Assembly: GCA_965285935.1 (NCBI GenBank)
Contig: OZ260664.1
Coordinates: 85,808,001 to 85,872,000, forward strand
Direction: 5' to 3'
Source: Ophelia neglecta
Taxonomy: Eukaryota
DNA: 64,000 nt
In this document: one piece after another, positions 10,965 to 56,294 of the stretch
How positions within the stretch are numbered: position 1 is the stretch's first letter
Layout: each line of letters starts with the position of its first letter
The notes under the pieces: model-generated
Told to the model about the DNA's origin: nothing
Database searches by the model: none
The model's input: the letters and a program-made list of their open reading frames with translations, nothing else
Position numbers and translations under genes: made by a program

Positions 10965-13324
10965 CTAGTTACCGAGGAAAGCTTGTATCTTTACACTGAT
11001 GGTATTGAATGTTGGTCTCATATCAGGGTTGTAATTCCAACAGTCGCGCATAAGTAGGTACCTATATAACATTAAAAAAATCCAGGGAGGACTTGTAATT
11101 AAACCATTACAATGCAATGCTTGTGTCCAATAAGTTTGCTTGTCCTTTGGTGTACGAGTAATAACGTTGTACATAGGCTATTCAACATGGCTGTAAATTA
11201 CATACACTTCTCTCGGGTTGAGAATGCTTTTTGGTAGAATTGCGCCTCCGACAATTTCTTTAATAGCGTCGTTGCGGTGTTTATCCTTAAGAGGCTCACA
11301 TCCTACAGAAAGATATGTTTTAACTGGGAGTCCTTAACTCGGGCAGGCATAAATCGATGTTATTTTGCATAAAATATTAGTACATAATGAAGAAGCAAGG
11401 AGGGTAAAGTGATGGGTCGGTGATGAATATCCCATAAATTAACAACTTGATGTTGATACTCAAATCAAACATTGCATATGTCTAAACTTGTTCCCTGAAA
11501 TAATCAGCAAAATTTATTGAATCACATTTTATTACTTAGGAATTGCATAAAGCTTGAATTATTTATGTCCGTTTGCCCTGATCTTATAGAACTGTACGTG
11601 AGCGATCATGTTTTTCGTTTAATGATCGGGGCATGACACAAAATTAAATCTAGGCGTATTGAGCGCGTTCAAAATAATGATTATTAATATGTCTGGTATA
11701 CAATTAGTGAATAATAATTGGGGATTTACGGAACATATTGTTTGGTCGTTAAGAAATGCTTATGCTTTAGTTCCTACCATGATTGTACAACTGCCACATG
11801 ACTACTCCAAACGCCCAAACGTCGGCCGACTGCCCGTACATACCATAGCTCAAAGTCTCCGGTGGCAACAAACCAATGGGCCATGTGGTCATCTGCAAAA
11901 CGTCGTGTGAATACAAACAGCCAACATTGTGTTGATAATGTTATTTGGGGTCGCGATTGCTTTGTTATAAGAGATTATGTATTATTTGCTGGAGACAGAT
12001 AAAGTAAATCGTGCTTCCAAGGAGTAATGGCAGGTGTAGCTGGCTTTCCGCTCAACCTTTTAACCCAAATCTGATATTATCTGATAATATGAAGCAATTT
12101 GCTATTATACTGTAGCATTGAAATGTTTTTTATTAATTATTATTTTGTTACTGTAAGTTTATATTTACTATTTTTATTTCGAGTACGCATTGTAAATTTT
12201 GCATTATGTAACAGAAGCACAATTTGGCGCAGTATCGTGTCCAGTAAGAAATTGCATTTGATTTAAATATCTGTGGCATCCTATACAATGTTAAGAAAAT
12301 TGATAATATTAATATTGTTTTATATTATTGTTTGAGTATTTATTTGTATCCAGGGGAAATTTAAAGGAAAACTGAGTCATTTTCTATTTTACGTAAAGCG
12401 GCAATGGAAACAATTTATCGTGAAAATACATTGGCTCTTCCAAACGCAAATAAGTGAAATGATTTCGTGTTACATAATTGTTTTGGAACTCACATCGGAA
12501 TCAGACTTTTCACAGTAGTGTTTCTCAACATCTTCAGAATGCCAGAATCCTCTCAGTTGCACGTTCATATGATGGGTAAGTAAAACTTTCTTCAGACATA
12601 AGTTTGGATGAAGGAAGCTAGGCTAAACGTAAAGAAGGACACAATATACTTCAGTTACCGACAAAACTATATGATTAGATAGATCTGACTTATTATGTCA
12701 ACGTACCGTATGCGTGTGGAGGAAGTCCAGTGCCATTGCAATATCCAATGACCACTTCAATATGAAACTCTGGTAGCTTTCAACGCTGATGCTATTCACG
12801 ACAAAGCTTTCCAGGTCGCAGTTAGCGGCGTATTCGTAAAAATTGTAGAGATAATCTGAAATAGAGTTATAGCAGATCTAATTGGGTACAGTTATTAATA
12901 CTGAACAGATATTTGTGTACATTACATTGGTCAGCAGAAGCATTTAAATACCTGCTGTAATGGTATATCCTACAAATGGTATGATGTATGGTGAAGGTCC
13001 GCAGTGTACACATGCTTTCAACTCACTCGTGGCCAGCTTGTACTCGACAAGATTTCCAAAAAGATCGTCTGCGAATATTATAGACACATTAAGGATTAAT
13101 TTTTACAAAACGATATTCACCTTGATTAGCTAAACACGAAAATCTACCGGTACAAGTTTTTTTCGAAAAATATGAGCATACTAACTTCTTGTTCGCTTGA
13201 CAACAGCTGACGCTTGACGTGACTTTCGGTCAGCTGCTGTCCACACCACTTTGAAAACCTCATTGCTTATTTTCTCCCCAATGAGAAATGAATCAGGGGA
13301 TATAATCAGCAGGTCCGCATCCGA
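10965..13324 (-). CDS. Tyrosine-kinase-fold (pseudokinase) domain of gene A, 7 exons
   Basis: IGEKISNEVFKVVW (Gly loop missing), AVVK, SELKA, FLHPNLCLKKVLL (HRDLAARN position), VQLRGFW (KIxDFG position), WPIGLLPPET, DVWAFG, CWNYNPDMRPTF. Confidence 0.9.
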
Positions 13325-16300
13325 CTGCATATGAGGCAACAAAACATAGCTGGATCAATTTGCCGTAACATTACTACCAAAACTAATGGAACGTCAATAA
13401 AAAGTGAGCAATTCGTTTTCGGTTCACCCTGCTCTTAGTTATTCACTTCATAATTTCTTGGTCTTTGATGCACATGATAAATACACGATAAAATTGTATA
13501 AAATTTAATTACGTACCGCTTTTGTTTCAGCCAATCCAATATAAATGGCTTCGGAAATTCTCTTCTTAGAAATCTCCAGTTTTTCATAATCATTTTCGTT
13601 ATTTTGTGCATTTCCGAGCACAACCTCAATACAAGAAAAAACATGATGGATTTGGAATATAATAGAGATTAATTACATGCCTCTAAGGTTACTGAAATTA
13701 ATCGTTCCAAACTAACATCTTAATTAAACAAGGTAATATTGTGAACATACTTCAGCAGTATTTTCGTATACTCCATCCTTCTCAGGGCAAGTGGAACTCA
13801 TATCGATTATGTCAGCATAAACCGGCTCAGCGATAGCCGACACTTCATTTATCATATGAAATAAAGAGCTAGTATTTCTCTTTGCAGGCTAAGCATGGCA
13901 TTTTTGTAAAAATACACAACACGCAAACTTGCAATATGAAATATTTGCACCCAACTCACCAGGAGGCGGTGTTTTGCGTAAATGAAGAAATAGTAAGACT
14001 AAGAATATTATGATCGCAGCCAATGCCAAACTACCAAATATACCACCAAGTATCGCTCCTATTGGAGAATCTGAAAAATACAAAATTGTCAAACAATCGT
14101 TTGGTGGCATTCCTTCTTTGCTAAATACGTAAATTAAAACCCTTCTTTTTAAAAAAATGTTCTATCCTACCACTTGTATTAGAAGCTGATGGAGCAACTC
14201 TGCCATCTTGTTCATCACTGCCACCGGAAGCTAGCCCTGCGGCTTTCAGGAATGAATCCTCGTAGACGCATAACACAAATACATTGGTCTTCTGCAGATC
14301 AAAGTTTCCATGTCCAACTACATTTCTATCGGTTATATCGGAACCGCTGATATCATCGTTGATCGTCTTCCATCCACCACCACATACAGTAGACCTTTTC
14401 CTCCGAACACCCTGAGCCTGATGACGAAGCTCCAAGACATACGCCTCTCCTTGTACGTATTCCCAGGTCAGGTTTACGTAAGATGTGGTCAGCTCCATCC
14501 ATGTAATATGTACAATCGGAGTTGCTGAAGTGAAAATAGATACACTATTAGTATTGATTATTAAAGGTGCCATAACTATGTACGGATTCTTAACAGAAAA
14601 TAATGAATGTTTGAGCTTTTGACATTTTACACTGAATTGTTATGTAGACAAAATGTCGCAAATGTTAGATAGGCAATACATATATTATTTCCACAAACGG
14701 AATTTAAGCAACAGGGACGTTGATGAATGTCGGGAAGACGATTATATTTCCGCCCTGGAGTATAGCAGGTTCACATATCGATGATCGAATTACGTCGAGT
14801 GCACTTTAAGTGGTAGCCTTACTATTGATAAAGATCCATATGATAATACAATCATTTCAATAGCCAAAGTATTTCAATAGCCAAAGTATTTATTCGTCGC
14901 ACTTTAATCAAGGTTTTCAACTTAAAATGTCCACCCTTTCAACCGTTTCGTGGCAATGAGAAAGATGTGAAACTACATCTCAAGTTGTCTAGGTATCAGG
15001 GGAAAATTCCGAATTCCATGAAAGGGAATACAATTGGCCTTTACAATAAATACATACAACTCCAAGACAATTACTGGCAAAAAAACGTAGCATGTTCTAT
15101 GACAAGTCGACTTTCTCGTAGTATTGTACCTTTCTGACTCACCTCGTGTTGTTTGCTCTAAGTTGCTAGTTTCACTTCGGTCGCGCTGTTCACCATACTG
15201 ATTGTAGGCCACAACCTCGAACACATAACTAGTAGAGTTTGTAAGATCGGACACTCTGTTGGAAATCTTGTTATTGAGTAAACATTGTGTCATTATCCGC
15301 TCTTCTATAACCAACTCGCCTTCCTCAGTGCCATACAAAATAAAGAACATTTCCTCGTCTCCGCCATTGTATCCACATGTCCAACGGAGTGTAACGCTCA
15401 CAGATGTGTATTCCAGAACTTCGAGGTTTGTTGGTGGATGAGGCGGGCCCACCTCTACTAACTCGATTTTAAAATTGACATTATACTCGGCAGCCAGGAT
15501 GCTGTTCGATGCAGTACATGTGTAATTACCAAAGTGATCGTCTGTTACGTTTTGAATGGTCACTGTACTGTCCAAATAGGTCACATGTCCTGGGATTGCT
15601 TTTCCATTGAGTTGCCAGGAAAAGGATCCAGTTGGCTTCATACATACTTTACAGTCCAGAGTGGTTGAGTTACCAACAAATGCAGCATATATCTTATCAG
15701 CATTATTGCCTGCCCAAAGCGCAAAGTCTGCATAGAGGTAAATCAATTGGTTAAACTTTTGTCGGTGCTATATCTTAACATTTTAAGCGTATTCTATGAT
15801 TGAAATGATTGTTTAGGGAGTCTATAAAAACAACTACTGCACTGAACATGATATCGAAACAATGCATATAAAATATAAACGCTCAAAGCCTTCGATAAAG
15901 ATGGTGTTTAATACATTTATTTGAAAAAGTAATACTACGAGGTTTGACATTTATGGACACAACTCACAAAGCGTCTCCAGTGTAGTCGCTTTGGATGTGT
16001 CACTCCTTATTCCGTCTGTAGCTGTACATGTGTAATCCCCGTCAAACTGGGACACGTTGTTACACGTAACCCCATTCCGAGCTTGTTGAGGGCTGAGAGT
16101 GCTCGTGCAGCCGTAAGTCATCCCATAAGGAAAGGGGCCATCGGTTGTCGGGTGCCAGGCGTGTACAAACCGGAGATCATTTGTGATGTCAGATGACCCC
16201 CACTTCCATCTTACCCCGTCCAGATCGGGTTTTGCTGTCACGGTGCAACTAATGGATATTGAGGTATCATTGACAAGAAACAGTTTTGTCTGTGGAGAGG

Positions 16301-19300
16301 TCGGTCTGGTAAACTGGGGACCAACTACAATGGAAGGAATAGACGCCCATGAACGATTACTGATACATTTTAATATTCGGTCAGATGATCTGAAAGTATC
16401 ACGATACTTGTTCTAAATTATCCTACATTTGTCATTAGCATACGTATCACAGATTAGCAACCAAATCTATTAATATTTGGTGAATGACAGGCAGCATAGC
16501 TCTTTGTCATTTCAAGTACCGTCAGCGGATTTAATAGTATAGCTAATGCCCTACTAGTCTCAATGAGTATGATCTCATGTGAGAAATATATTTGCAAAGT
16601 GCAAAAGGGTTTTTCGTGCATGTGATCAGACAACATGGTTCCTGCATGACACATAGGTCCTTATCTTCTTGAATTCTATGTGCCCTGCCTTTGGGAGGGT
16701 TTATTCGTTAGGCTCACACGACGGTTGTGGGACCAGATAAAGACCAACTACCAGCCGACTTAGCTTAAAAGGTGGTTTAAATATGAGCCTTTCATATAAT
16801 TCCTGGTACTCCCCTATTTTTGACTCCTCTGAGATGCTCTTGAGTGCTGCATATCATCATTTACCGGTCAGGTTAAAACAACATGTTCGCCTTGAGCAAG
16901 CGAGATGGGTTGACAAAAATACCAATTCTTAAAGCATTTGTGATACAGAAATACCTGCTGTCTGGTATTTCGTAGCAATCTTCGGTGGACGACTCATCGG
17001 GAACAAGTCGGTTCTAACACTCAAGTGGCCAGGCGCCTCTCGACAAGTCGGCCTCGGTGAAGACCACTCTGTTCATGGAGGGTCATACCCCCCCCCCCCA
17101 TTGAAACTGGAGATTTTAAAAATTCCAAAGAAACAGTGCATATTATTAAATGTCGGATGATGTAGTATCGAATGAATACAGTAAACAGAGGAAGGTGTGA
17201 TGGTCAAAACGCACTTGTTTCATCAAATGACACGACTTTTCTGCCTAAACACATGGTTTATACGGGCCGTACGTGTTAAGACGCAACGGCTTTTCCAGAC
17301 AATACGGGCCGTACGTTGTGAAGCACCTACTGGTTGTACAAGAAGACCGTACCACCAGTGCTTACGCTCTGTTCACAACACACGGCCCGGCTGTGAGAAA
17401 TGTAATTGACAAGTGTTTTGCACGGCTTTTAAGTAGTAGCAACGTAGTAGATCGCGCATCGGTTTACCAAGACTGATCATTATAGTAAATTACACCAATA
17501 AGTAAGTCACATTACGCGCCCGTCAAACGCCACTTTTCCCTTATCATTACTTGGTTAATGTTCACAAATTTACTGTATGGGTACTTTACCGGTGTTACAG
17601 TTTTACTTAACGTGTACGGCCTGCGGTAGACCTGTGTTGAGACAGGAAAGCCATGTTATTTGTCGAAACAACTTGAATGCGTTTGGGAGGCATTACCTTA
17701 TATAGAAGCCGGCCCTCTCTTTTTAGCCACCGTGACCGGGACGTATTGGACAAATTACATAAAACATAACCAGATGGTTAAAATCAGTAGACCTACCGCC
17801 TGTTTACATTTACAGTGGCCCCTGTGCGTACATGCACACATCTATGCACGTACGGTGACGGAGGTTTTGTACAGCATAAGTGCGTGTTCATTGTTAGTTA
17901 GCCGTGTTTGTGAGGTACAAAACGCATTTGTTCACAACGCTTTGCTCTCTAAACACACGGCTTAAATAGGGGTCGCGCACTATATGAATAATATGTACTC
18001 AAATGTACACTGCAGGGGCGCTTCCTGTGCAAATGAATCATTCATTTTTTTTAGTAATTATCATAGCAGCTGGTCATTTGATTTATTATAATATCTTGTT
18101 CTGTAATTTGAGACAAAAAATAAAGTTTTTCTTCAAGAAATCAGTGAAATTGCATTTTTGTGGTAAAACTTGCTATAATAAGAAGTAGATGGAACTTACA
18201 GTGTTTAAAGGGGATAAACACTTTCAATTGCATATGCTGAAAAATTGAGCTGCTGAATGTGTGTTTAAACAATTTTATCCAATTGCTTATATAATTAGCT
18301 ACAAATTCATATTAATGAGATATCCCAACGGGTGTTTTCTTTTTTTTTCTTTTTTTTACTGTGCTATAGGCTAAAATGGACGCTTATGGCAAAATTCATG
18401 CCATGTTGTAACCAAAAGGCCTAGCGACCAACACTTTTAAGTGGGTATCTGGGGATGTGATACAAGTATTCGCCCAAAGACGGCCCTGTTGTTAAGAATT
18501 TCAAACACGGCTGGTTATTAAATCAAAATTTCCATGTCTGTATGCGTACGTATTATTATTATTTTAAGTCATAAGAAAGTTGTATAAGCTGAAGGTGTAT
18601 AGGCCTAGATTTAATGAGCAGACAGAGTAAGTGAACTGTATACAGTTTGCCAGATCGGCCGAAGTGACTGCTTGACCCTCTCGGTCTGTTCCACACTAAT
18701 AATAATAAGCAAAGCATGGGCCAACACTCAGAATGCCATCCAACAATTTGTTTGTACAAACACAATTTATCAAAGAGGGTCCAAACATATAATTCTTAAG
18801 TGTTTCTTATACTTACCGATGATGTCTAGTTGAGTATCTGCCGATACTTCTGATTTGAGCCGTCCAGTATATACCAGGTTAGAAGCCTGACAAGAGTATC
18901 CTCCGGCCTGATTAATATTTATGATGGAAATTTCAAGGGAGTTCTGATTGGTATCACCAGGGGGAGGTTGTACACCAAACCAGGTAAATACGTCTGCCTC
19001 TGGGTGACCTTTATCTGCCAGGTAACACGTCAAGGTCACATTGTCTCCAGCGTACACTTTCTGGTTTGAGAGCTGGAGGACCGGACGGGACGTCGAATCT
19101 GTGAATGGACAGAAAGGGGGTTGGTGTGAACCAGGCTTTCCTCGTGTAAATTGGCAGACGGCATATTGTACACATTTAGAGGTAATATATCTCATGAACG
19201 AACCCTATCATGAGTATTTCATAAGGTTTCCAGTGTGACATAGTTCTCTACGTCATTGTGGATTACTTGCCCGTAGAAAGGGAAAGACAATTGACTCAAC

Positions 19301-22300
19301 AATTTTAGGAAATGCAGATGGTGTGAAAACACTGTGCTAACAACCCAGAAACAAGGAGCAGTGAACATATTACTAGTTTGATTTGGTATAGATTGTCTTA
19401 GTCTTGACTTTCACTTGCTAGGAATATCCTTATCCTACCTCTATCAATATTAGATCAATATTATTTGTCGTACAAAATATGAATAATATAACAGGTATGG
19501 CATTTATTTCACGATAGTAATAAATTAATATAGCCCCGACTCATTTGTAAAAGCAGTGTGTGCCCTTCCTCTCGCCTGGAACACTTGGCCAGTGAAGGCC
19601 GGTGTTTATTAGACACATCAATAACATGAGACGCTCGGTTGTCGTAGCTAACCAGGGAGTTTGTTGTGTGATTCACGATAATAGCAAATACTTCTACTTA
19701 CATTGGACGTTAAGTTGGAGCTGTTGATTTCCTGCCGCCCCGATTCCGTTCATTCCGTTACACGTGACCGTCCCACTCGCCGATTTCCTGTCTTCTAGGT
19801 CGTTATTGGCCCATGTCAGAATAGAACCAGATACAGTTAGTAGATCACAGCTCCCTCCCTGGGTGTTGGTCATGCTATTCTGTTTAAGACCGTTGTCCTG
19901 TCCTGGAGACCAGGACCACTGGACTTCAGCAGCCGGCTTGGCGCTGTACGAACACTGGACGTCTACTGTATCATTGTTCAGGACAGTTAACTCGGCAGGT
20001 AAAGGTGTATTGACCATTAATGGTGGCACTGAAATACATCAATATCTTTGCTAAATCATGAAGTTATATGTTTGTTAAACACAATTATCGAAGCTTTTAA
20101 GAAAGAACAATTACCATTGACAATAAGCTGTACAGCCGCACTCCCGCCGACTCCCACCGTGTTATAAGGTGTACATGTGTAGGTGTCTTGCTGACATTCT
20201 GATGTCACGGTCACTGACAGTGTCCCGGCGTTGGTCTCTATAACACCACCTACTGACCTTGTCCAGTTCACACTAGATACAGGATTACCGGCGTTCCACG
20301 TGTCTCCAAGGTTACACATGAGAGATGCCACAGACTCCACTACGGCGGTCACAAGGCTGCTACCTGCCGTAGCCGACCCAGGTGGGACTGGAAACCAAAG
20401 TTATACAATTGATTTTCATCTAAAATGAAACACATATTAACAACAAAACTGGAGGCATTCCGTTGACGTTACTGCCGACGCCTGAAACGTGACTTAGCTT
20501 TGCCTTAATTAGTCTCATCTAACGTAGATATTCCTAGCCAAGTCTGTAGAGACTGTGAGAATAGCAACCCTATTTCTCGGTCCAGGGCTCGAACCTTGGT
20601 GAGGACCTATTTTTGTGTTTGTACATATAACCTTACATCGAATTACGTACAGTTTTGTGTTGATTATCTCTACTTGTCAATTGCACTATTTCTTTTAGTA
20701 AATGGAGCTTTACCAGCATTTGTCAAACTGAATGTGAAGCCTGTACGTCGCGCATAGTATGTGTTGCGGTGGTTTGGGCGGGTCGTTTCGTCATTCGTGT
20801 CATAGGTTCCCCGAACTGCGACAGCCGACGTTATTTTGATAAAAGGCGATAACATTGCATCCAGCGGGTAAAACATCAAAGACACACGAAACCGTGGACA
20901 AAACAACGTGAACGTCGAGGGGTATTCCAGTAGGTATTAGGCATGTTAGTTTTCAGGAAGCGCCTATATTTTGGGAGGATGACAATCGGGCTATTGGAAT
21001 AATAATATTATAGATTATTGGTTCTATATCAGTAAGCCCCTAATCTTTAAAATGTCTTCTGTTTTGAAACATACCGGGCAGCTTTACACACCGCGCGATA
21101 TGATTTTGATTACTCTATATACGTTCTTACCGTGTGTGATACAAACCTGAAAACAGTCCGAGCTGTAGTGAACAGGGATTATATTCCTAAAACAATGTCC
21201 CCGCGGTGACGGACGTAGCCACAAAAGTATCGCGATCTGCACTTTTCATAGAAGTTAAATGAAGACCGTACAAGTAAGGCGAAGTATGTAACAGGCGCAC
21301 GTCCTAGATTGGTGTAAACGTGTGGGTGTCCCCTGGCTTGGAAGTCCCCCTTGCTACATTTACTAATCATTACCCCCACTGGGACCTCTCGCTCTTTAAA
21401 CACTAGTATTTGAAATCTGACGGGGTATAAATCTTAGTAATCAGGGATCCGGCCTGCAAATAGTGATTTATTACGTCTCCCGGTGGCAAAACAGTTTTCT
21501 TGGGGCATTGTTATCCTATAGGTTTTGAGTTCTGGGACTGGTTAACCTTTTAAACCTAACACTCATTCACTCGATCTATTACCTTCAATTCCATTTGGGA
21601 ATGTACGTAAGATTAAAACTTCGCCACTTTGACATTAGATGGCCAGTGAAAAGCCATATGAAATATATCACTCTGTAATTAACAATATGTTATCCATCAG
21701 AAACCGTGAATTCCCGAAACGTTCATCTTAAAAACTTTATACATGCTGAAATATAGCAACAATCTTTATAAGGGTTCTTAATCAAAAAGCAGAACAGCCT
21801 GTCTAGCGGCACCTAGAGACAGTACAAAGAAGGAAAAGGGGTAATGTGAAATAAAGATTGGATTATTGTCGTATCTATAGGCATAAGAAAAGTCCCACTT
21901 ATGTCAGAGTATTTTTCAGGGCATGGCTTTACATGAAGGGCCCAAAGTTCACTTCTTGTGACATGAAAGGGTGTGTTTTTTATGGTTATTGTCTCCCCAG
22001 ATCCTTTTGTCTGTAAAAAGAGGCAGATCAATACATATTTAGAAACAGATTCATCCAGATTCAGGCATATTTTGTTTCACTATTATCGCTGTTTGTCAGG
22101 TTTCGGTGGATCTATGGATCCATTGTTGTCGCATAGTTACATGCATGGGTCTATATTTCGCACATCCCGTCACAACAGGCCCTATACGCCCCTCCCCACC
22201 ACCACAACCACTGCGACCGACCCCAACACCCACAGGGATCATCCCTCTCCCGTGTTCACCCTTCCCACTCCTTGCCCTCCTCCTTACTTCAGTACCCCCC

Positions 22301-46795: not shown

Positions 46796-47029
46796 TCTTT
46801 AATGTCCTGATGAACATACAGGTCTTGATCTACTCTTTCGCTCTATGCAGGTGTGCATAGTGCCTGAATAATGTTGAACTGTCGACTATTGCGCGTTGCG
46901 TTCTTGGGCGCGCATTTGGATAAACAGCCTGAACGTTATTTTGAAATCTCTAAACAGAAATAGTTGAGAACTAACTGTTTGTAGAAGATAATATTACTTC
47001 TCAATCTGTTCTCTCTTGACAGGATAACC
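46796..47029. promoter_or_regulatory. Candidate bidirectional promoter / 5'UTR region between head-to-head genes B and C
   Basis: Only 234 bp separate the two divergent start codons. Promoter activity is inferred from geometry, not from a recognised motif. Confidence 0.5.
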
Positions 47030-50000
47030 ATGATTAACGCGCTCGCCTGTTTGATGTGTCTATTGAGATTACTAAGTTCAGCGGGTAAGACACAACTTTC
47101 AAATTCATTATTATATATCGAGCCAAAGAAAATTCTATATGGGGCTATATGTCTCATTCGTTATTCAATTCTAGGTATTATACATTAATCAATTCTATCA
47201 TTAACTTAACTGCAGCAAGCTCGGTCGGCGTCGTATGGAGCTCAGAGTATTATGTCTTGGTGGGAGACAACATCAGCCTATCTTGCTCTATGAACATACA
47301 AGGCGCTTATCGCAAAGCCCAGTGGAATACAGACGCTGTAAATAATCAAGCCTGTTCAATGTGTCATAATCCCGATTCACAATACATCACAGCTATGGGA
47401 AATCCGTGTGATACAAGTCTTAGATACCGAGACGGGGGTTGTGATGGCAATAGAACCTGGATCACCGGGACACTGGATGTGACTATAGACCGATCAGACA
47501 TCAGGGAATGGGTGTGTGTAGGACCTTCGGTCCAAAATCAGGCATCAGAGTCGCTCACAATCCACGAATTCAGTAAGTTTATCTATTGCATGTTTTTTAT
47601 TTAGGATGCATATATAATGGTTGTATGCCATAAATTGCCCTGCCGAATAAACCGCGGTATTTGCATGACCAGCCATGGAATGTAATGTAAGTCCGATTTC
47701 TTCTCCATCTCGAATAAGAATAATACGAGACAGATGTAAAGAACAAAGGGTTGAGATTTCGTTTTGCCAATTTTGAATATATGCTAAAGGATCGTACATT
47801 GCATACAAAGGCGATCGTTTAAACACACATTCGCCTCCTTACTGGGCTCAGTGCTGTCCACTTGCAGAAGAAGTTAGTAGTTTGAAACTTAACTTGCTTT
47901 GGGCATAAATCACTGCCAGCATGTGAGCCTGCGAGCATCTAACCAGTGATATAGCCCATAGTTATAGGTAAGAGGTATGGCTCATTCAAGCAACAGTTAC
48001 ACCGTTATGCTAAAGGCTGGTTTTTAATTTCATCATTAAAATTGTTTAACTAAAATGCAAAATCGGTCAGCTGGGTTTGATTGGAATAGGTTCATGCTGT
48101 CTTAAACAATTCCTGATAACGCAATTCTCTTAAGTCAAATCATAAACGATAAGAACTTTTTTTTTCCAATTTTTTTTGGAATGTTCACCAGGTTCACCCC
48201 ACCTAAAATTCCCAAAAGTCTGTTCTTAAAGCTGTAAGTAAAATTTTGAGTGTGTATAAAGTGACCCCATTCGGTTAAAAATTTGAAAAGCCCTCTCCAC
48301 CCAATATGAGTGGTATAATCCCATATCGGGAAAAAAATATATATGCGCTTCAAATTGACAAGGGCGAAAAAGGGCGTACGCAACGATTTTAAGAAAATAT
48401 TTTAATGCTCTGGACGGTAAACTATAATAACTTAGTAATTCATTGCCGACTCACACAGAATATACAGTTCTAGGGAACTGAACTGTATCATTACCTTTTT
48501 ACATACGAATGCCCTGAGAACTAGGTGTTATTTGGAACATGCCATTCAGTTTGGCATAGAAGTTCTCTGTCAGCAATTTTGCTTAGACTGTGGTACTGTT
48601 ATTTGAAATGTATTAACTTACCAAACATATATATGTACATGGCTTCATTGTAGTGTCAACAAGGAAAGACGTGCAATTGATTTTAATTGAGCTTATATTT
48701 CCTGGCTATCAATCCTGTTTAACTTCTCTGAACCCAAATTCAAAGTATAATGATAAAGGATGTACTGGTATGATTTTAATCGGCGAGGCAGGGGAGGGTT
48801 GGAAGGAAGGGTGTAGAAAGAGCATAAAAGTTTTGGGGCCCAGATTCCTGCTCCCGAGAGATGTTTTGCACTCAATGAGTAAAGACAAAGTTATCTTTAA
48901 ATGCATTTTGCACTTAAAAGGTTACATTTCTCCACATTGAGTGATATTTATGATTTGAGACACAATTTTCTCTGAATTAATGTGACAATATCCATAATGA
49001 AACGCCATTATATTTAGTAGCTGCGTAAAGCTATTAAATATTATATGTGGAAAAACACCAATTAACTAAAACACTTCCGGGAGTACGCCAAGCAGGTTGA
49101 TTGTTGGCGGGTTATACTCAGAAATGATTTATATCATTTAAGGAAGTTATGTTGCCGCTGTTCTATGTCAAGGATCATCAAGAATGCGGAAAGTTTGCTC
49201 TCACACTATAAGTGTTTTCCTCATATAAATAAAATACCCGTCTCTGGTACACCACTGTAAGATTAAAAAAATATACGTTATGTGTACCGTGTAATCGTGG
49301 TAAGTGGCTTTTTTACTTTGCGTATCGCATCAACAGGGCAGATATGAATGGAAAATGGATCAAGACGCATGACATCTCTACCCCACCCACCAGTCTCAAC
49401 GCGTAACACGTGGCAGCGAGTTCTGAATGTACTAATTACAATGGTATGCTGCCCACTTAGACCAGTAGTAATGTAATTCGAGACAGTCCGGACTGTCGGG
49501 AAAGAAACATTACGAAATTTATACAATAAAACCTTTATTGAGTCACTGATGCGACTAATATCTTGCCTAGAAATGTCAAGGCAACGTTGTTTAAATTATG
49601 AGATAAAAGCATCATTGCTACCGAATCCTTGGTTCGACCACCCATGAGCGAAGCCACAAGATAAGAGCATTTTGTTTGAGAGAATTAAATGCCTAAGCAC
49701 AAAATGTCATGTTGCCCTGGACGTCCCAACACGCATTCACGCCTAAATCTAGCCATGATTTATTTTTATTTACAGAAGCGACGTCTACTCCATCAATTGA
49801 CAACTACACCTCCAACGCCGTGCAGGTAGTGTCTGTAAGAGAAAATCAACAAAAGTCATTCACCTGTCGTGTACAGGGTGGCGCTCCTGTGCCAGTTATC
49901 ACATGGTACCAGACCCCAAACACTAACATCACAGACAGCCCCCAGCAGGACTACGGCAATGGCGGATACTCCCTACTGTTGGATATAAACATGACCCGAC

Positions 50001-53000
50001 AAAATGACGGGGTAGTGATTTACTGTGGTGTCCACCAGCCAGGGTCATCGCATTCTCAACTTTCCCAGTCTCCAAAACTTACAGCTAACGTTCTCTGTAT
50101 GTATTCAAAACCTTCCTCATCATTAAGACAACAACTTATAAAACGAAAGACTAGTGAATACCCGACTGAAAAATAATGAATAGATGACATTGCATTAAAT
50201 GGTGCACCAAGCTTTGGGGATGGAGGGGGAGTGGGGTATGGTGGGGGTCTTATTATAATGTCTATGACGCGGAAAAGTGTACGCATTAGAGCACCGCTGC
50301 CTAAACGGGGGTATAATGTGTCAGCCACACAGTATCCATTGACTGTGTCAATGGCGAGTTATGAATCACTGAATTTCATTGATATAACCTTGCAAGTCAT
50401 ATAGGATTAATCAAATTTAGTAACTGACACGCAATGGTGATCACAATTATTCAAAAACATTTGAACGGTTTGTTAGGAGTATGGTCGATGGAGTTTGGGT
50501 ACAGTTAATACTCACTTTGTAGACCAATGCATTAGTCAAAGCATTATGGTGGACAAATCATAGGCTTTTTTATTCATCAACTATGCTCATAATCGGTGCA
50601 AACTATAATCAAAAACTGTAAATAAAGCTCTTAAGTATCATACTAATAATGAAAATTACGAAATTAAGATTAGACTTATTAACAAATATTTATATATCGA
50701 GAGTTTAGGTAAAATCTCGTGCTCTCTCTAATTGTTTTATTTAAAGTGCACCTCAAGAGGGTGAGAACGATTTTCTGTGGTCCAATACATTTCACCGTTT
50801 CATACCTGATTTTGTTTTACTGTACCACGCTGCTTGTAGACAAACCAGATCCGGCAGTGGCCACTCAGGCTAATGTCGTCGTTACACTGGGAGACACTAA
50901 TGTGTCGCTGAGTTGCCAGGCTAACAGTCAGTGGCCAGGGAACCCTCTACCGACCTTTACCTGGACCAGGACTGGGGGCGGCTGGAGCGATAACGGACAT
51001 ACTATCCACGTGTCCGTACTGAATCCGTGTATAGACACGTATTATTGTACTCCTTCTAACAGTGAAGGTTTGGGAACACCGGCTAATGTGACCCTTGAGA
51101 TTTTAGGTGAGAACAAGGAAGAATTATTGGTGTAACCGACCATACTAATATCATGGTAACAGAACTTAATATGTCGTTTTGTCTTAAAGCGCCCACCGTA
51201 ACAAGCACGACAATCCAAAGCACTGTTGTAGCTGTAAACACCGACGATAGCTGGATGGTGAGATGTGGCTTTAAGGGACTACCTGCGCCTACTGTCAGCG
51301 TTACAGGACCCGGAATTGGTAATATATATCAGGTGGTCCATGGATCTCCCAGCCTCACCGTGGATTGTTATCAGGAATCTTCCGTCATCTTGAAATGGAA
51401 GGCGGTAGACCAAAACACCAGGAAGGCCGGAAGTGCGCGAATTACATGTACAGGAAGAAATGGTGTTGGTTCAGTACCGGGTAGTCATCACTTCAACATC
51501 GACGTGCAATGTAAATACCTCTTGTTATACAAGAACTTGGCGAGAAATGTTATTTGCTCTTCTGGTTTATATCGAAACGACCCCAGTAGAGGAAAGAAAT
51601 ATACTTATTTTTTCAATGTAAAGCAATAGAATAATTGACTTATTAGATAAACCAGGAGCAGCATCCTCTGAATCGTTGTCACCTGTTAGTGTGCACCAGA
51701 CGGCGACACTGCACTGTTTTATGGCTGGAGACACTGAAGGAAACCCAATATCCAAATTCAACTGGACACGGAAAAATAATTCTACATGGCAGGTTTTAAA
51801 CAATAATGGGAGCCTGCTTCTTCCAATAACAGACATGACTTTTGAAGACGAATACTACTGTACTCCATGGAATATCCGCGGAGCAGGGCAGAAGGCGACG
51901 ATCCAACTTACATTTAAAGGTTAGAGATTGGGCTACCTGAAGAAGATTAACTATAAAAGTCCGCCAGTCTGGTGCTTTTAGATCACCAGGCATATAGTTC
52001 GAACATTCTATAGTTAATGTATTTAGCTACCCAAGGACTATACTGCAGTTGCTCTAGTAACTAAAAAACACTTGCGCCGGATAAATATTTTTAGCTATCT
52101 TAATTTATCGCTAGTTGATACATCGAATTTATGTCTATACCTCATAATGTAGAATGGGCGTTACGATATTATTATGTTCTTTTGAGAAAATCTTCCACAG
52201 GCACTCCATTGGCTGTCATAATAGGAGGAACAATCGCGGCTGTTATATTTGCAGCCACCATAGTCATCGTTTTAGTTGTGCTGCGCAAATATAGGAAAGG
52301 AAGTCAAAATGGTAAGTTATGATTTTGTATTGATCCAAACATCATTTCGATCCTACTGCCTTTCGAATCAGTCATATTTTCGTTTTCGATATGTGTATGT
52401 CCATTTCATGCGTTATTGGTCTTGGCAGATTATCTAGAACCAGTAAAAAGACCATGCGACGACATCGATGGCATTGACTCCGTCTACAGCGTCATCGATG
52501 ATATTGATGTGATCCCCACCAACCTCCATCCGGATGCCCAGGATAACGTATATTTGACCATGTCATTTTTATATCAATCCGGCATTTTTTTCTCTGTAGC
52601 GTTGAACCTGTAATGCTTAAGTGATGCTAGTGGATTTATTTTATATCATGTTAACCCAAATAAACATTGGATTGAGTGAACTGTTTTAGAGCACAGTATC
52701 CTGTCGCAAAGGGAATTTCGCTGTTTTCCCTCGCCCGAAAATAATAATTGACACCTAGATACGTGTTTTTGAAAGGTATCCAAATAATACGTCTAAAAAG
52801 GCTTAACCATTGAAAAGGAATGATGTGTGGATTCCGATAATCCAACTACCAACAGTTCTATATCTGCTCAAGTAGATATACAATGCCAATAGGCTGAAAC
52901 ATCTGTCCAGATAATCGGAAACCAGTCGGATGTCTGATTGGGCGGTCCTGTTAAATTAATTATTAACATATTCAAATAGTTCCATTTTCTACACCTTGAA

Positions 53001-56000
53001 ATTGTTTGCCATGGAGAACAAGTTCCTAGAACGGTTTTTGACTAACTTCTGTTCCTGCTAACACTGAACAAGAAGAGCCATATTCCAGGGAGAGCCACAA
53101 TAGCCATTGTCAGGGTAAAATAATGGAGCAGACTTTATGATTTTTTTTTCAGTCCGCGGGGATTGCAGTACATTGTTGTAAATAAAGTTGTTCGTCTGTC
53201 AATTTTCCAATTTTCTTCTTTTGGACACTAATCTTCTCATTGGAAAATGACGACACTCATTTTGATGACCCTCACTTTCATAATAACAAATAATATAATT
53301 GATTGAATAGCTAGCGTCTCTATATTCATCAGAATATATAAAAGAGCAAACCTATAATTAGTACCCCCAAAAAATGAAAGGATGAGGTTTTTTTTATAAT
53401 AAATGAAGATTTTGGTAGGATTGTATTTTATTGTAAAACGTATGAAGCGAATATGGACTGGCAGATGAATCTATGTATTCAAACAATTCAGTTGGCGCAA
53501 TGACCTGTTGTCATTATTTGTATAATGTGCTTCGAAAGTTAATTTTTTATTAAATATATTCTCGCTTTACAATGCCCCCCATGATAGCAAAATATATACA
53601 AAAAAGTGTCTTAATGATTCATCCTATTCATATAATAAGCAGATTGTCAAGAACACTTCAGCTGATTACGACTTATTGGACAAGGAAGCTAATAGACTGT
53701 CCAGGAATTTTTACGCCACCCTAGAGAACAAGGATAACAGTGTGGTACGCCACTTATACTATTATGTCATATATCATACTATTAACACGAATAGCACCAG
53801 TGTTTTCGAATTATCATATGTCATTCCATCAGGAATGAAATTGAATTTTCATGTCATAGGAGAATTTCAATTTTGTGTAACAGGATGCGCCTGCGGATTC
53901 TTTTATCGTCCCACCTGGCGCGTTCAGCTTGGGGAAACATTTACGTAAAGGAGCTTTCAAAGTCATTTGGTCAAGTGACAACTATAGTTCGAATGCTGCT
54001 GTTGTGAACCGAATAAATAGTGCGGTTTGATATAATTTCATCTCTAAACAATATTGGCCAGCAATGATACTGACATTTTTTAAGGCTAGCCGTACCCCAT
54101 TCACTTTCGCATTTTTCGTTACTTAATAAAACACAAGTTAAAGGGTTTAATCATTCACTTCGCCTGCGTATTCACGAAACACACAATACATTAAAATGAA
54201 TTACAAATGTGCCCAAACACACGGATGTTGTCCTCAATCATCGGAAATATAACTTTCCCAACAAGCCGACGATCCACAAAATTATAAAACCTATATGATA
54301 CGTAAATTAACTACATAATCTAATGTATTTCCCATGTTTCTTTATTCAGACAACCCGAGTGATGAGGACTACTTAATAGCATTTAATGGTTTGAAAGCAT
54401 TGTTAAAATGTGAATCCTCACTTTTTGTCAGTCGGTTAATCGGATTCACTATTACAAAGGGTATTGATAATGTTATTCATCTGCATTTTTTTCTACTTTA
54501 ATTTTGGTGGTTGAAGTTCGGTTCAAGAAAATTGTTTCCCTTTTCTTTCGTGCAGAGTTTCTATATGTTATGTCGGAATTCGCAAGCGAAGGTAGCCTTC
54601 ACAAGTTTGTCAAAACAGCACCGAATGTGTCCTCGTACGCATCCCATATACTGAAATGGTCAGGGAACATTGCTCAAGCCTTTGATTACCTTCATTCCGA
54701 ATCCGTAAGTATATTCAGGTAAATCATGTTGACTTATAATCACGGTATCTTGTGGCGCACTGGTATCTTTAATACATTTAAATTCTTAATAATATGTATT
54801 GTGTCCAAACTTTAAAAATAATAGTAATAAATGGTCATAGATAGTTTTCTTGGGCGGATGGGTACGGCTATACTATTATAAAATCTGTTTATGTAAATAC
54901 AAACTATCATCTATAAAAACATGTATTCTATTGTAGCAACCATTCCTCCATCCATGTTTATCATTATATCAAATACTGTTGGATTCTCATCTACGAGCCA
55001 AACTAAAAGGATTTTGGCTGGCTCAAGATGTGGTTGCTAAATATGCCAAGAAAGACGAGGTAAGGATCGAAATTTAGCGTCTGCATTCTTGTACCCCCCC
55101 CCCCTCAAGGTATTTCCCCTTCCCCACGTTATTTCCCTTCCCCGGCTGTGTCGAATAGCTAGACGAAAAGAGTTGAGGTAAATTGGTTACTAATCATCGG
55201 AGCCTATTTTTTTTGTATACGCTGTTTAATTTGAATATACACGCTATGTGTCAGGTTATTCCTATCATGTTTGTGTTTTTAGATCACAAAATGGCCAGTC
55301 CGTCACCTGCCCCCTGAAACTTTACTCTATGGTGTATACAACCAAGCATCCGACGTCTGGGCATACGGTATCCTGATTTGGCAAATATATAACAACGGTA
55401 AGACGGCATAATGTTTAATGCGAATTAAACAGGTCTGCGTTTGAATTTCAATAGGACGGATTAGAAAACCTACTTATATTCAAACGTAAACGGAGGAAGG
55501 TCATTCATATTAGCGCCAACTTAGAAAATATATGTGCGTGCGTGTAGTAGGCAGACCAAATGAATATGTATGCCCGTTTTAACAAATCTGCTGTATAACA
55601 ATAAGACGACATTCACAAGCGCATTTATTTACGAATATGTATTGGAATAACGGAAACTCATTCCTTTTTGGCATACTGGAAAACCTGATACGAAATTCGA
55701 AGGAAATACGAGATACACAGATACGAAAAATTAAGATTGAGTTGGATTATGACAGGGTAAGGGGTAGGGTTAAGCTAGCAACCTAACTAAACCATAACTT
55801 ACTTTATCCTTCACCCTAACCCTAACCTAGTCCATATGGCTACGTTTTAAACACCTCGTATCTCGTATCTGCGTCTCGTATCTGGTATTTCGTATCAGCT
55901 TTTCCAGTATGCCTTCCTTTTTTTATTGGTGAACTACAGTGTGATGTATTTATTTAGGGAGTATTCCTTATCATGCCACTAAAGAAAGTGAAGTTGTCAA

Positions 56001-56294
56001 GGCAATATGCGATGGTGATGTAATGGATATGGGAGAAGGGTTTCCAATGTCATTGTAAGTGTTCTACGAATTGTCAATAGTTCTGACCACATTTATGTCA
56101 CAATATGTTGTATTCAAATGTTGCTTAGATGTACGTGGGACAACGCCCTGAGAACGGGAGCTGCTATTAAATTTGGCTCTTTTTCTTATAGTGAAATGTA
56201 TATTCGAGTTTGTTGGAGATACGAGCAGGACAAAAGACCGAGTTTTTCTAAAATAACGAACAAATTGAAGTCGCTGACCTACAGAATGAAATGA
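47030..56294 (+). CDS. Gene C: Ig receptor tyrosine-kinase-like pseudokinase (SP, 5 Ig, TM, ITIM-like and ITAM-like motifs, dead TK domain), about 920 aa, 16 coding exons; paralog of gene A
   Basis: Exons 47030-47084 (signal MINALACLMCLLRLLSSA), 47216-47572 (V-type Ig), 49776-50096, 50840-51106, 51190-51510, 51647-51919 (Ig), 52201-52311 (TM LAVIIGGTIAAVIFAATIVIVLVVL), 52429-52547, 53643-53744 (juxtamembrane), 53884-54019, 54350-54460, 54556-54704, 54937-55059, 55283-55397, 55958-56054, 56192-56294 (kinase: NIAQAFDYLH, PPET, SDVWAYGILIWQI, CWRYEQDKRPSF). Cytoplasmic intron positions and phases match gene A. Confidence 0.9.
53884..56294 (+). CDS. Tyrosine-kinase-fold (pseudokinase) domain of gene C, 7 exons
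   Basis: LGKHLRKGAFKVIW (Gly loop missing), AVVN (beta3 Lys lost), NGLKA (alphaC Glu lost), FLHPCLSLYQILL, AKLKGFW, WPVRHLPPET, DVWAYG, CWRYEQDKRPSF. Confidence 0.9.
55670..55913. mobile_element. MITE (non-autonomous DNA transposon, Mutator/MULE-like) with 9-bp TSD in an intron of gene C
   Basis: TIRs GGCATACTGGAAAACCTGATACGAAAT and ATTTCGTATCAGCTTTTCCAGTATGCC (1 mismatch in 27). Perfect TTCCTTTTT duplication at 55661-55669 and 55914-55922. Internal inverted GATACGA and telomere-like TAGGGT/ACCCTA repeats. Confidence 0.88.

What the first reader, a model, noticed from the sequence alone, without database searches (positions are those of the whole stretch)
10965..56294. Candidate undescribed recognition system: two ITAM-bearing Ig receptor pseudokinases plus a linked two-Ig partner
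Seen in the sequence: genes A and C are intact inverted paralogs. They share a Cys-rich V-type tip domain, variable-length Ig stalks (11 vs 5 domains), a VYxxI motif, an ITAM-like YxxL-x11-YxxL motif and a tyrosine kinase domain disabled in the same way. Their ectodomains have diverged more than the kinase C-lobes. Gene B, an almost tail-less 2-Ig protein, sits head-to-head with gene C. Established: ITAM/ITIM receptors signal through recruited Src/Syk kinases and SHP phosphatases; clustered Ig receptors with such motifs mediate allorecognition in Hydractinia (Alr family); head-to-head tgrB1/tgrC1 do so in Dictyostelium. Inference: RTKs that lost catalysis and switched to immunoreceptor-type signalling, possibly in self/non-self or cell-cell recognition. 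I do not recognise this architecture as a named family.
Basis: partly seen in the sequence, partly recalled or inferred. Interest (0 to 1): 0.9.

Follow-up and report, generated by a model that had tools for sequence, protein, structure and literature searches.

The report
Clustered Ig-receptor pseudokinase gene family
Two genes in this window belong to a tandem cluster of at least 28 animal cell-surface receptor genes, each joining a fast-evolving antibody-like tip and an Ig stalk to a dead tyrosine-kinase domain with a conserved ITAM-like motif; I found the family described nowhere, and no RNA evidence could be obtained.

Summary
Gene A (- strand, 10965-25690) has a V-set tip, 10 more Ig domains, 2 FN3, a TM segment and a tyrosine-kinase-like domain. 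Gene C (+ strand, 47030-56294) has a tip, 4 Ig domains, a TM segment and the same kinase-like domain. Both kinase domains lack the HRD Asp (FLHPNL / FLHPCL) and the DFG Asp (GFW). Both carry YxxL-x11-YxxL in a small exon just before the kinase.

The new result is scale. A and C are two of at least 28 such genes, nearly all within about 1.7 Mb of one chromosome. There are four subtypes, and all show the same catalytic losses and the same ITAM-like exon.

Stalk length changes by loss of whole Ig exons. Among R-type paralogs the tip evolves at dN/dS 1.38, against 0.19 for the catalytic-loop exon. Mosaic identity also points to gene conversion.

Gene B is a small, tail-less membrane protein. It lies head-to-head with a C-type gene in all four copies found, but its model is weak and no B-C binding is shown.

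No homologue of the pseudokinase exon was found in public proteins. Related ectodomains in another species carry short ITIM-like tails with no kinase exon found.

No RNA data could be obtained, and the organism is unknown. An immune or self/non-self role is inference only. Verdict: a new variant of known kinds.

The parts
25301..25672 (-). Gene A tip exon: V-set Ig domain with six conserved Cys (CxxC plus W-x-C)
   Evidence: Alignment of 15 paralogs. AF2 pLDDT 81 with VH/VHH-like fold. Phase-1 splice sites at 25674 and 25300.
14976..25193 (-). Gene A stalk: nine single-domain Ig exons (open frames 24822-25193, 24137-24673, 23679-23990, 22975-23370, 22556-22996, 20059-20352, 19697-20029, 18773-19195, 15954-16241), then one exon encoding Ig plus FN3 (14976-15746)
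   Evidence: Pfam Ig_2, Ig_3, C2-set_2, I-set and fn3 hits. Exons without a Pfam hit match Ig exons of paralogs by tblastn. Phase-1 acceptor and donor pairs.
13973..14573 (-). Gene A second FN3-like exon (14124-14573) and TM segment (14062-13973, with a GGIFG small-xxx-small motif)
   Evidence: tblastn finds this exon conserved in R-type, HHK-type and another species. The hydrophobic segment was read. This exon has no Pfam hit.
13508..13888 (-). Gene A juxtamembrane exons: VYADI (13822-13808), VYENT (13771-13757) and the ITAM-like YEKL-x11-YIGL (13588-13532)
   Evidence: The ITAM-like exon is conserved in all four subtypes.
10965..13354 (-). Gene A pseudokinase, seven exons (13184-13354, 12947-13102, 12701-12877, 12473-12622, 11770-11940, 11181-11333, 10968-11177; stop codon at 10965-10967); FLHPNL 12616-12599, GFW 12550-12542
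   Evidence: PF07714 hits on K5 and K7. Best PDB matches for K5 are ROR1, BTK, MuSK and Trk. Motifs read.
42399..45694 (-). Gene B: candidate signal exon 45694-45574, domain 1 about 45391-45149, short Ig domain 2 about 43858-43630, TM plus a 7-residue tail and stop (42593-42399)
   Evidence: Copies recur next to C-type genes. The model is not verified by RNA. Domain 1 is not confirmed as Ig.
47030..47580 (+). Gene C candidate signal-peptide exon (47030-47084) and V-set tip exon (about 47209-47580)
49709..51924 (+). Gene C stalk: four Ig exons (open frames 49709-50173, 50719-51132, 51153-51626, 51676-51921); no FN3
   Evidence: Pfam C2-set_2, Ig_2 and Ig_3 hits. The third exon matches Ig exons of A by tblastn.
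52119..53760 (+). Gene C TM segment (52209-52298) and juxtamembrane exons: ITIM-like SVYSVI (52482-52496), VYLTM (52548-52562), ITAM-like YDLL-x11-YATL (53667-53723)
53881..56294 (+). Gene C pseudokinase, seven exons (53881-54027, 54319-54498, about 54546-54719, 54937-55074, 55283-55408, 55945-56055, about 56118-56291 plus stop); FLHPCL 54943-54960, GFW 55009-55017, beta3 Lys replaced (AVVNR 53998-54012)
   Evidence: Exon-level PDB matches are weak.

Best explanation
A and C are two members, of different subtypes, of a lineage-restricted tandem family of at least 28 single-pass IgSF receptors. Each has a membrane-distal V-set tip, an Ig stalk of variable length, two FN3 domains in most subtypes, a TM helix, tyrosine-rich juxtamembrane exons and a tyrosine-kinase-fold domain that cannot catalyse phosphotransfer in the canonical way.

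Most likely mechanism:
1. The tip binds a ligand. This is inferred from its being the fastest-evolving part.
2. Engagement clusters or dimerises the receptor. This is inferred from the GxxxG-like TM motif and from how receptor pseudokinases usually act as dimerisation scaffolds.
3. Another tyrosine kinase phosphorylates the conserved YxxL-x11-YxxL and neighbouring tyrosines. SH2 proteins then dock on them: a Syk/Shark-type tandem-SH2 kinase, SHP on the ITIM-like site in C, and Grb2 on YxN in A. This step is inferred.

The family grows by tandem and segmental duplication, by loss of Ig exons, and by gene conversion. The most likely biological role is cell-surface recognition, of either microbes or other cells.

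B is a small, tail-less membrane protein transcribed divergently from C-type genes. It may be a partner or a decoy, but that is unproven.
For: Architecture and catalytic losses (shown).

Family size and clustering (shown): 28 catalytic-loop exons match. 26 lie at C7:85.09-86.76 Mb, one at 82.92 Mb and one on contig C33. All read [FL]LH[PHS]xL ... K[LV][KR]GFW.

ITAM-like exon in all four subtypes (shown): A has YEKL..YIGL, C has YDLL..YATL, R has YESL..YASL and HHK has YEPL..YESL. Twelve R-type copies are 81-100% identical over this exon.

Variable stalk length by exon loss (shown): the copy at 85.94 Mb lacks exons A03-A06, and the copy at 86.06 Mb lacks A07-A09.

Purifying selection:
- Stalk dN/dS is 0.26-0.42, with p from 1e-5 to 1e-18 against neutrality, in the three A-type comparisons. 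The C-type stalks are weaker: 0.35-0.40, p 0.014 and 0.065.
- The R-type catalytic-loop exon has dN/dS 0.19.

Fast tip evolution:
- R-type tips have pooled dN/dS 1.38 at a similar dS.
- A tips are at 0.69-0.76.
- B's domain 1 differs from its +122 kb copy by 13.5 nonsynonymous and 0.5 synonymous changes.

The tip is a V-set fold.

The B-C head-to-head pairing is kept in four copies.

Related ectodomains on another species' contigs carry short tails with ITIM-like tyrosines.

Precedent for intrinsic ITAMs on invertebrate Ig receptors: oyster CgIgR recruits Syk (PMC6994640), and Hydractinia Alr proteins carry ITAMs and ITIMs (PMC9546547).
Against:
- The 11-residue spacing exceeds the strict ITAM definition of 6-9 (PMC9546547), though it fits the 6-12 definition used in PMC6994640.
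- A's VYADI does not fit the ITIM consensus.
- Tyrosines just before a kinase N-lobe could be a structural or autoinhibitory juxtamembrane element rather than a docking site.
- Elevated tip dN/dS among paralogs comes from non-independent pairs. It is also confounded by mosaic gene conversion: A and its 86.73 Mb copy are 90% identical at the tip including its flank, but 98-99% identical elsewhere.
- Within A-type and C-type paralogs the kinase dN/dS is only 0.46-0.60, or not distinguishable from neutral.
- Nothing shows expression in immune cells, polymorphism or any ligand.
Confidence: 0.55

Rival explanations
1. The proteins are developmental adhesion or guidance co-receptors of the PTK7/Off-track kind: Ig-rich receptor pseudokinases that scaffold Wnt, plexin or other RTK signalling, with no role in immune or self/non-self recognition.
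For: An Ig-rich ectodomain, a TM segment and a conserved dead tyrosine-kinase domain are exactly the PTK7 layout (PMC11196218). The pseudokinase catalytic-loop exon is under purifying selection. Ig-FN3 ectodomains are typical of neural adhesion molecules.
Against: - PTK7 is a conserved gene with seven Ig domains and no FN3 (PMC11196218).
- Here there are at least 28 rapidly duplicating genes with 5 to 11 Ig domains, tip dN/dS up to 1.38 and gain or loss of stalk exons.
- The replacement motifs (LHPxL, GFW) are specific to this family.
- PTK7 was not among the 60 best of the 645 PDB matches for the K5 exon.
Confidence: 0.2
2. The kinase domains are still active through a non-canonical mechanism, as in WNK, CASK or HER3, so these are unusual but functional receptor tyrosine kinases.
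For: The His of HRD, the APE-region, the alphaF signature (DVWAFGV) and the alphaI signature (CW..P..RP.F) are kept. A and the R-type keep the beta3 Lys. The HHK-type keeps the catalytic-loop Asn. The replacement motifs are invariant, which suggests they have a function.
Against: All 28 copies lack the catalytic Asp and the Mg-binding Asp, and the Gly-rich loop is degenerate in the three subtypes read, A, C and R. C has also lost the beta3 Lys and the alphaC Glu.
Confidence: 0.08
3. The cluster is mostly evolutionary debris: recent segmental duplicates of one or a few genes that are decaying, so the apparent 'system' has no function of its own.
For: Several copies are very recent (94-100% identical exons). 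One B-like copy carries two stop codons and one tip copy carries a TAG. LINE insertions sit in introns. The same genome is reported to hold an Ig-exon 'graveyard' (unchecked note s1-735119).
Against: More than 20 exons per gene remain open in A, in C and in five fully inspected paralogs of the same two subtypes. Stalk dN/dS is significantly below 1. The catalytic-loop exon has dN/dS 0.19 across 12 R-type copies. Four subtypes that are only 40-50% identical keep the same motifs and exon structure.
Confidence: 0.05
4. B and C form a dedicated pair, either a cis co-receptor or a trans ligand-receptor pair, comparable to the head-to-head tgrB1/tgrC1 genes of Dictyostelium.
For: A B-like gene lies 1-2 kb upstream of, and divergent from, a C-type tip exon in all four copies found. 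The putative start codons in the window are about 1.3 kb apart. B's domain 1 is the most diverged part of B: 13.5 nonsynonymous to 0.5 synonymous changes against the +122 kb copy, binomial p = 0.05.
Against: Three of the four pairs are recent segmental duplicates (units about 122 kb apart), so the repeated linkage is largely one event. The fourth B copy carries stop codons. B's gene model is weak. B's domain 1 is not significantly similar to the A/C tip (hhalign E = 0.083). Two C-type genes, at 86.72 and 86.82 Mb, had no B-like match.
Confidence: 0.15

Closest known systems
PTK7 / CCK4 / Off-track (receptor pseudokinase with an Ig ectodomain)
   Same: A single-pass receptor with a multi-Ig ectodomain and a conserved tyrosine-kinase fold that has lost catalytic residues and acts as a scaffold (PMC11196218).
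   Different: PTK7 has seven Ig domains and no FN3, is conserved from Hydra to human, and has its own pattern of substitutions. Here there are at least 28 clustered genes with 5 to 11 Ig domains, with or without 2 FN3, a Cys-rich V-set tip, LHPxL/GFW substitutions and a conserved ITAM-like exon.
Hydractinia Alr family in the allorecognition complex (PMC9546547)
   Same: A large single-locus family of IgSF receptors with a V-set membrane-distal domain, an Ig stalk, an FN3-like membrane-proximal fold, extra conserved cysteines, and ITAMs or ITIMs in the tails of many members.
   Different: Alr proteins have no kinase-like domain, and their tails are too diverse to align. Here the cytoplasmic part is a conserved pseudokinase with one fixed ITAM-like exon. 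Sequence homology to Alr was not tested because I had no Alr sequence with a reference. Polymorphism and a role in allorecognition are unknown here.
Oyster CgIgR (five Ig, TM, intrinsic ITAM; recruits Syk) (PMC6994640)
   Same: An invertebrate Ig receptor carrying its own ITAM-type motif rather than relying on an adaptor. Gene C also has five Ig domains.
   Different: CgIgR has a short tail with YTEL-x8-YEKL and no kinase domain. Here the spacing is 11 and a pseudokinase follows. Homology was not tested.
Vertebrate multigene Ig immunoreceptor clusters (KIR/LILR-type) and Drosophila Draper (ITAM with long spacing)
   Same: Tandem expansion, variable Ig number, fast-evolving distal domains and tyrosine-motif signalling. 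From my own knowledge, Draper's ITAM also has a long spacer and binds the Syk-family kinase Shark.
   Different: None of these has a kinase-fold domain. Activating KIR/LILR members use charged TM residues and adaptors, and no charged TM residue is present in A, B or C.

Membership tests
Protein tyrosine kinase fold (Pfam PF07714) | Significant match to the PK_Tyr_Ser-Thr profile, plus the TK-type alphaF and alphaI signatures | tested here: met
   A's K5 exon scores 36.1 bits against a cut-off of 23.1, and K7 matches weakly. The signatures DVWAFGV and CW..P..RP.F were read. PDB matches for K5 are tyrosine kinases: ROR1, BTK, MuSK and Trk. This was tested exon by exon only.
Pseudokinase | Loss of the catalytic Asp (HRD) and/or the Mg-binding Asp (DFG), or of the VAIK Lys or Gly-rich loop | tested here: met
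   All 28 catalytic-loop exons read LH[PHS]x instead of HRD and GFW instead of DFG. The Gly-rich loop is degenerate in A, C and R-type. The beta3 Lys is lost in C. Biochemical inactivity cannot be tested with these tools.
PTK7/CCK4/Off-track | Ectodomain of seven Ig domains without FN3 | tested here: not met
   A has 11 Ig plus 2 FN3, and C has 5 Ig. PTK7's architecture is taken from PMC11196218.
PTK7/CCK4/Off-track | Kinase domain orthologous to PTK7 in a phylogeny | tested here: inconclusive
   Only exon-level PDB searches were possible. PTK7 was not among the 60 best matches for K5. K3 and K4 gave weak or no kinase matches. The search and tree with the joined domain were left out, as the rules require.
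ITAM-bearing immunoreceptor | Yxx[L/I]-x(6-9)-Yxx[L/I] (PMC9546547), or x(6-12) (PMC6994640) | tested here: inconclusive
   The spacing is 11 in all four subtypes. That lies outside 6-9 and inside 6-12. An acidic residue sits 1-3 positions before the first Tyr in all four.
ITAM-bearing immunoreceptor | The doubly phosphorylated motif binds a tandem-SH2 Syk/ZAP-70/Shark kinase | not testable with these tools
   This needs biochemistry. The presence of Syk or SHP genes in this genome was not checked.
ITIM-bearing receptor | [I/L/V/S]xYxx[I/V/L] in the cytoplasmic part | tested here: inconclusive
   C's SVYSVI fits. A's PVYADI does not, because Pro sits at position -2. HHK-type has NPYDNI at this position.
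IgSF V-set domain (the tip) | Nine-strand V-type Ig fold | tested here: met
   The AF2 model has pLDDT 81, pTM 0.77 and nine strands. Foldseek's best hits are antibody VH/VHH domains, with E about 1e-5 and TM 0.6-0.7. There is no Pfam V-set hit at sequence level.
Hydractinia Alr family | Sequence or structural homology to Alr ectodomains and residence in the ARC | not tested
   No Alr sequence was available by reference. The organism of the window is unknown. Alr proteins lack a kinase domain (PMC9546547).

The most novel reading that the evidence does not exclude
The cluster is a germline-encoded recognition system of a kind not yet described. It would be a large array of receptor pseudokinases whose V-set tips diversify under positive selection and by gene conversion. 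The receptors would signal through a built-in ITAM-like motif. Some members (C-type) would be paired with a co-evolving small partner (B), and the system would serve self/non-self or pathogen discrimination in this animal lineage.
Probability: 0.2. Interest if true: 0.9.

Novelty: new variant of a known kind. Interest (0 to 1): 0.66.

Why it matters
Receptor pseudokinases are known as single, conserved developmental co-receptors. Multigene Ig immunoreceptor clusters are known to signal through bare tyrosine motifs or through adaptors. This family combines the two. It is a fast-expanding cluster with diversifying tips, and every member keeps a constrained dead kinase domain and one fixed ITAM-like exon.

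If the genes are expressed and signal as proposed, the family would be an independent invention of an immune-type receptor repertoire. It would also be a natural test of what a pseudokinase adds to ITAM signalling. The four subtypes, the exon-loss variants and the B-C pairs give ready-made comparisons for experiments.

Tried and rejected
- Joined models: the rules require spliced models to be searched exon by exon. The search, fold and tree of the joined proteins, including the whole kinase domain, were therefore left out.
- Tip profile against 1.84 billion representatives: nine hits. Six are short ORF fragments from ENA/Logan assemblies and three are generic multi-Ig proteins.
- R-type catalytic-loop exon against the 5.8-billion-protein set: no candidate. 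The length and word limits of that search apply.
- PDB searches with kinase exons K3 and K4 gave weak or no kinase matches. K5 gave many tyrosine kinases without discrimination.
- Organism identification through the LINE reverse transcriptase: only hits at 25-35% identity, mostly unnamed. Earlier notes of the scan gave no taxon either.
- Complex prediction, C tip with B domain 1: verdict 'no answer', score 0.00. This is no evidence either way.
- hhalign of B domain 1 against the A/C tip profile: not significant, E = 0.083.
- AF2 model of B domain 1: pLDDT 56, unusable.
- Signal-peptide exon of A: no convincing candidate within 4.6 kb upstream.
- Kinase exons or the ITAM-like motif on the other-species contigs L015 and L062-L065: none found within the fetched flanks.
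- Literature searches for a described Ig receptor pseudokinase family with ITAM: none found.

Full report
SETTING. The window is G000:C7:85808001-85872000 in a 762-Mb animal genome of 223 contigs. The organism could not be identified. GC content is 33-45% and there are no N runs.

GENE A. On the - strand, a series of open frames with phase-1 AG/GT boundaries encodes the following, in order:
- a tip domain (25301-25672);
- nine single-domain Ig exons;
- one exon holding an Ig plus an FN3 domain (14976-15746);
- a second FN3-like exon (14124-14573);
- a TM exon;
- two juxtamembrane exons;
- seven kinase exons, ending at the stop at 10965.

Pfam finds Ig families in most stalk exons, fn3 in the Ig-FN3 exon, and PK_Tyr_Ser-Thr in kinase exon K5 (36.1 bits, cut-off 23.1) and weakly in K7. 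The stalk exons without a Pfam hit match Ig exons of paralogs. Summing the exon cores gives about 1,700 residues. I built no joined sequence for any search.

GENE C. On the + strand the order is:
- a candidate signal exon (47030-47084);
- a tip (about 47209-47580);
- four Ig exons;
- a TM segment (52209-52298);
- two juxtamembrane exons;
- seven kinase exons, ending at 56294.

Gene C has no FN3 domain and comes to about 950 residues.

THE DEAD KINASE. Where a kinase has HRDLAARN, A reads FLHPNLCLKK and C reads FLHPCLSLYQ. Where it has DFG, both read GFW. The Gly-rich loop is degenerate in both. The beta3 Lys is kept in A (AVVKR) and lost in C (AVVNR). The alphaC Glu is kept in A and lost in C. 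Fold-defining tyrosine-kinase motifs remain: the alphaE helix (DIA..M.[YF]LH), the WP[IV]R.LPPE segment, DVW[AV]FG, and CW..P..RP.F.

Exon-level PDB searches show how far the domain has drifted:
- K5 matches ROR1, BTK, MuSK and Trk at about 35-37 bits.
- C's K3 matches ZAK and Lck only weakly.
- A's K3 and C's K4 match no kinase.

As required, I searched the spliced model exon by exon and left out any search, fold or tree of the joined kinase domain. The family can therefore be placed in the tyrosine-kinase group but not in a named family.

THE TYROSINE MOTIFS. A small exon directly before the kinase holds YEKL-x11-YIGL in A (13588-13532) and YDLL-x11-YATL in C (53667-53723). The exon before it holds VYADI and VYENT in A, and SVYSVI and VYLTM in C. 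C's SVYSVI fits the ITIM consensus. A's PVYADI does not.

THE FAMILY. The catalytic-loop exon of A finds 28 matches in the genome. 26 lie at C7:85.09-86.76 Mb, one at 82.92 Mb and one on the unplaced contig C33. Translated, every one lacks the HRD Asp and the DFG Asp and keeps LH..L and GFW. They fall into four subtypes:
- A-type: HPN, 4 copies.
- C-type: HPC, 3 copies.
- R-type: HP[RS] (one HSR), 14 copies.
- HHK-type: HHK, 7 copies.

Catalysis was therefore lost before the family expanded, and the replacement motifs have been conserved since. The YxxL-x11-YxxL exon is present in a representative R-type gene (YESL..YASL) and a representative HHK-type gene (YEPL..YESL). Twelve R-type copies keep it at 81-100% identity. 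The TM helices of A, R-type and HHK-type begin with GG[IV]FG and C's with GGTIA, a GxxxG-like motif.

THE TIP. Fifteen tips from the cluster align with six conserved Cys, namely B-strand Cys, CxxC, two more, and W-x-C. With 26 sequences, AF2 gives pLDDT 81 and pTM 0.77 with nine strands. Foldseek's best PDB matches are antibody VH and VHH domains. 'V-type tip' is supported at the level of fold. Pfam does not detect it.

EVOLUTION OF THE CLUSTER. The unit A-B-C recurs about 122 kb downstream, and B-C recurs about 122 kb upstream.

The A-type paralogs differ in stalk length. The copy at 86.73 Mb has all exons, the copy at 85.94 Mb lacks A03-A06, and the copy at 86.06 Mb lacks A07-A09.

Nucleotide identity between A and the 86.73 Mb copy is mosaic. 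It is 90-91% over the tip and its upstream flank, 98-99% over Ig2-4 and the kinase, and 90-96% in between. This points to gene conversion or recombination among paralogs.

Stalk dN/dS is 0.26-0.42 and significantly below 1 in the A-type comparisons (p from 1e-5 to 1e-18). The C-type stalks give 0.35-0.40 with p 0.014 and 0.065. These are not decaying copies.

Tips are faster:
- A-type tips are at 0.69-0.76.
- Among five R-type tips, pooled dN is 0.105, dS is 0.076 and dN/dS is 1.38.
- Twelve R-type catalytic-loop exons at a similar dS (0.094) have dN/dS 0.19.

The pairs are not independent and conversion confounds the estimate, so I read this as strong contrast rather than proof of positive selection. 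Variable tip positions lie mostly in the B-C loop, in the segment around the CxxC, and at the start of the F-G loop. The enrichment in loops is modest: 33/59 against 25/65 in A-type and 21/53 against 18/63 in R-type.

GENE B. On the - strand, divergent from C, lie:
- a candidate signal exon (45694-45574);
- a domain-1 exon (about 45391-45149);
- a short Ig exon (about 43858-43630; Pfam Ig_3 E = 1e-5, below the cut-off);
- a TM exon that ends seven residues after the membrane (RKKKKTK, stop at 42399).

The putative B and C start codons are about 1.3 kb apart.

A B-like domain-1 exon sits 1-2 kb upstream of a C-type tip in four places. One of these copies carries two stop codons. Three of the four are recent duplicates, so the repeated linkage is not four independent observations. 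Two other C-type genes showed no B-like match.

Domain 1 differs from its +122 kb copy by 13.5 nonsynonymous and 0.5 synonymous changes, while the rest of B is identical (binomial p = 0.05).

Domain 1 has no Pfam hit and is not significantly similar to the A/C tip. It folds with low confidence. The complex prediction of C tip with B domain 1 returned no answer, which I do not count for or against binding.

OUTSIDE THIS GENOME. The tip profile found nine proteins among 1.84 billion representatives. Six are short single-exon ORFs from ENA or Logan assemblies, and three are generic multi-Ig proteins.

Contigs that carry these ORFs encode the same order of exons: tip, Ig, Ig-FN3 and FN3, at about 30% identity. 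On L064 a TM exon follows, then cytoplasmic exons with IQYTTV and SDYATI (ITIM-like) and YVNT. No kinase exon and no YxxL-x11-YxxL motif was found within the fetched flanks.

The R-type catalytic-loop exon had no candidate in the 5.8-billion-protein set. Records of the window's own genome are withheld from these tools, and exon-length queries see only fragments, so absence elsewhere is not shown.

The picture is an ectodomain family that in another species carries bare ITIM-like tails and in this genome is joined to a pseudokinase.

COMPARISON WITH KNOWN SYSTEMS. PTK7/Off-track shares the idea of an Ig ectodomain with a conserved dead tyrosine kinase. It fails on architecture, on copy number and on motif pattern (PMC11196218).

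Hydractinia Alr proteins share a V-set distal domain, an Ig stalk, an FN3-like proximal fold, extra cysteines, ITAMs or ITIMs, and a single large locus. They have no kinase domain (PMC9546547). Homology to Alr was not tested.

Oyster CgIgR is a five-Ig receptor with its own ITAM that recruits Syk (PMC6994640).

Four literature searches found no description of an Ig receptor pseudokinase family with an ITAM-like motif.

VERDICT. The interpretation that catalysis was lost and replaced by motif-based signalling is the best reading of the anatomy. The signalling steps, the immune or self/non-self role and the B-C interaction are all inference.

Noticed in passing
window 30375-34417 (+): An unrelated multi-exon gene lies between A and B. 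The exon at 31402-31980 matches Pfam UNC-93 (E = 6.7e-8), and further open frames at 30375-30812, 33679-33879 and 34166-34417 look like membrane-protein exons.
   Followed up: partly
window 35290-39212 (-): A LINE-type retroelement with two long open frames: 539 aa that read like an endonuclease (not scanned) and 712 aa with RVT_1 (E = 7e-18). The closest public proteins are only 25-35% identical.
   Followed up: partly
G000:C7:85726001-85746000 and 85940001-85990000 (L049, L050, L055-L058): The A-B-C unit is part of a segmental duplication with a period of about 122 kb. Identity along the copies is mosaic, from 87% to 100% within gene B alone, which suggests ongoing gene conversion.
   Followed up: partly
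window 14976-15746 (-), also L015:10575-11165 and L064:4087-4671: One exon encodes an Ig domain and an FN3 domain together. This unusual exon is conserved in the A-type, R-type and HHK-type genes and on another species' contigs. The Ig part has an extra Cys (LDCKVC) and the FN3 part has two Cys.
   Followed up: no
L064:5524-7423 (+), a contig of another species (ENA ERZ25069296): A related tip-Ig-FN3 gene continues into a TM exon and cytoplasmic exons with YVNT, IQYTTV and SDYATI, the last two ITIM-like. No kinase exon was found in the fetched flank.
   Followed up: partly
window 13588-13532 and 53667-53723; L043:1370-1477: The 11-residue spacer of the ITAM-like motif holds a conserved basic-x-Ser site (KKRIS, ANRLS, TKRLS) in A, C and R-type. 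It resembles a basophilic Ser/Thr-kinase site. It is absent in HHK-type.
   Followed up: no
G000:C7:86164001-86204000 (L042-L045), segment positions 14280-16748: The R-type gene inspected has a LINE insertion (endonuclease-like and reverse-transcriptase-like open frames, by eye only) and microsatellites in the intron between its TM and ITAM-like exons.
   Followed up: no
window 22096-22440 (both strands): A Pro/Gly-rich low-complexity stretch gives overlapping open frames on both strands inside an intron of gene A. Similar PPPPP stretches occur near 24480-24680, 45700-45810 and 50056-50330.
   Followed up: no
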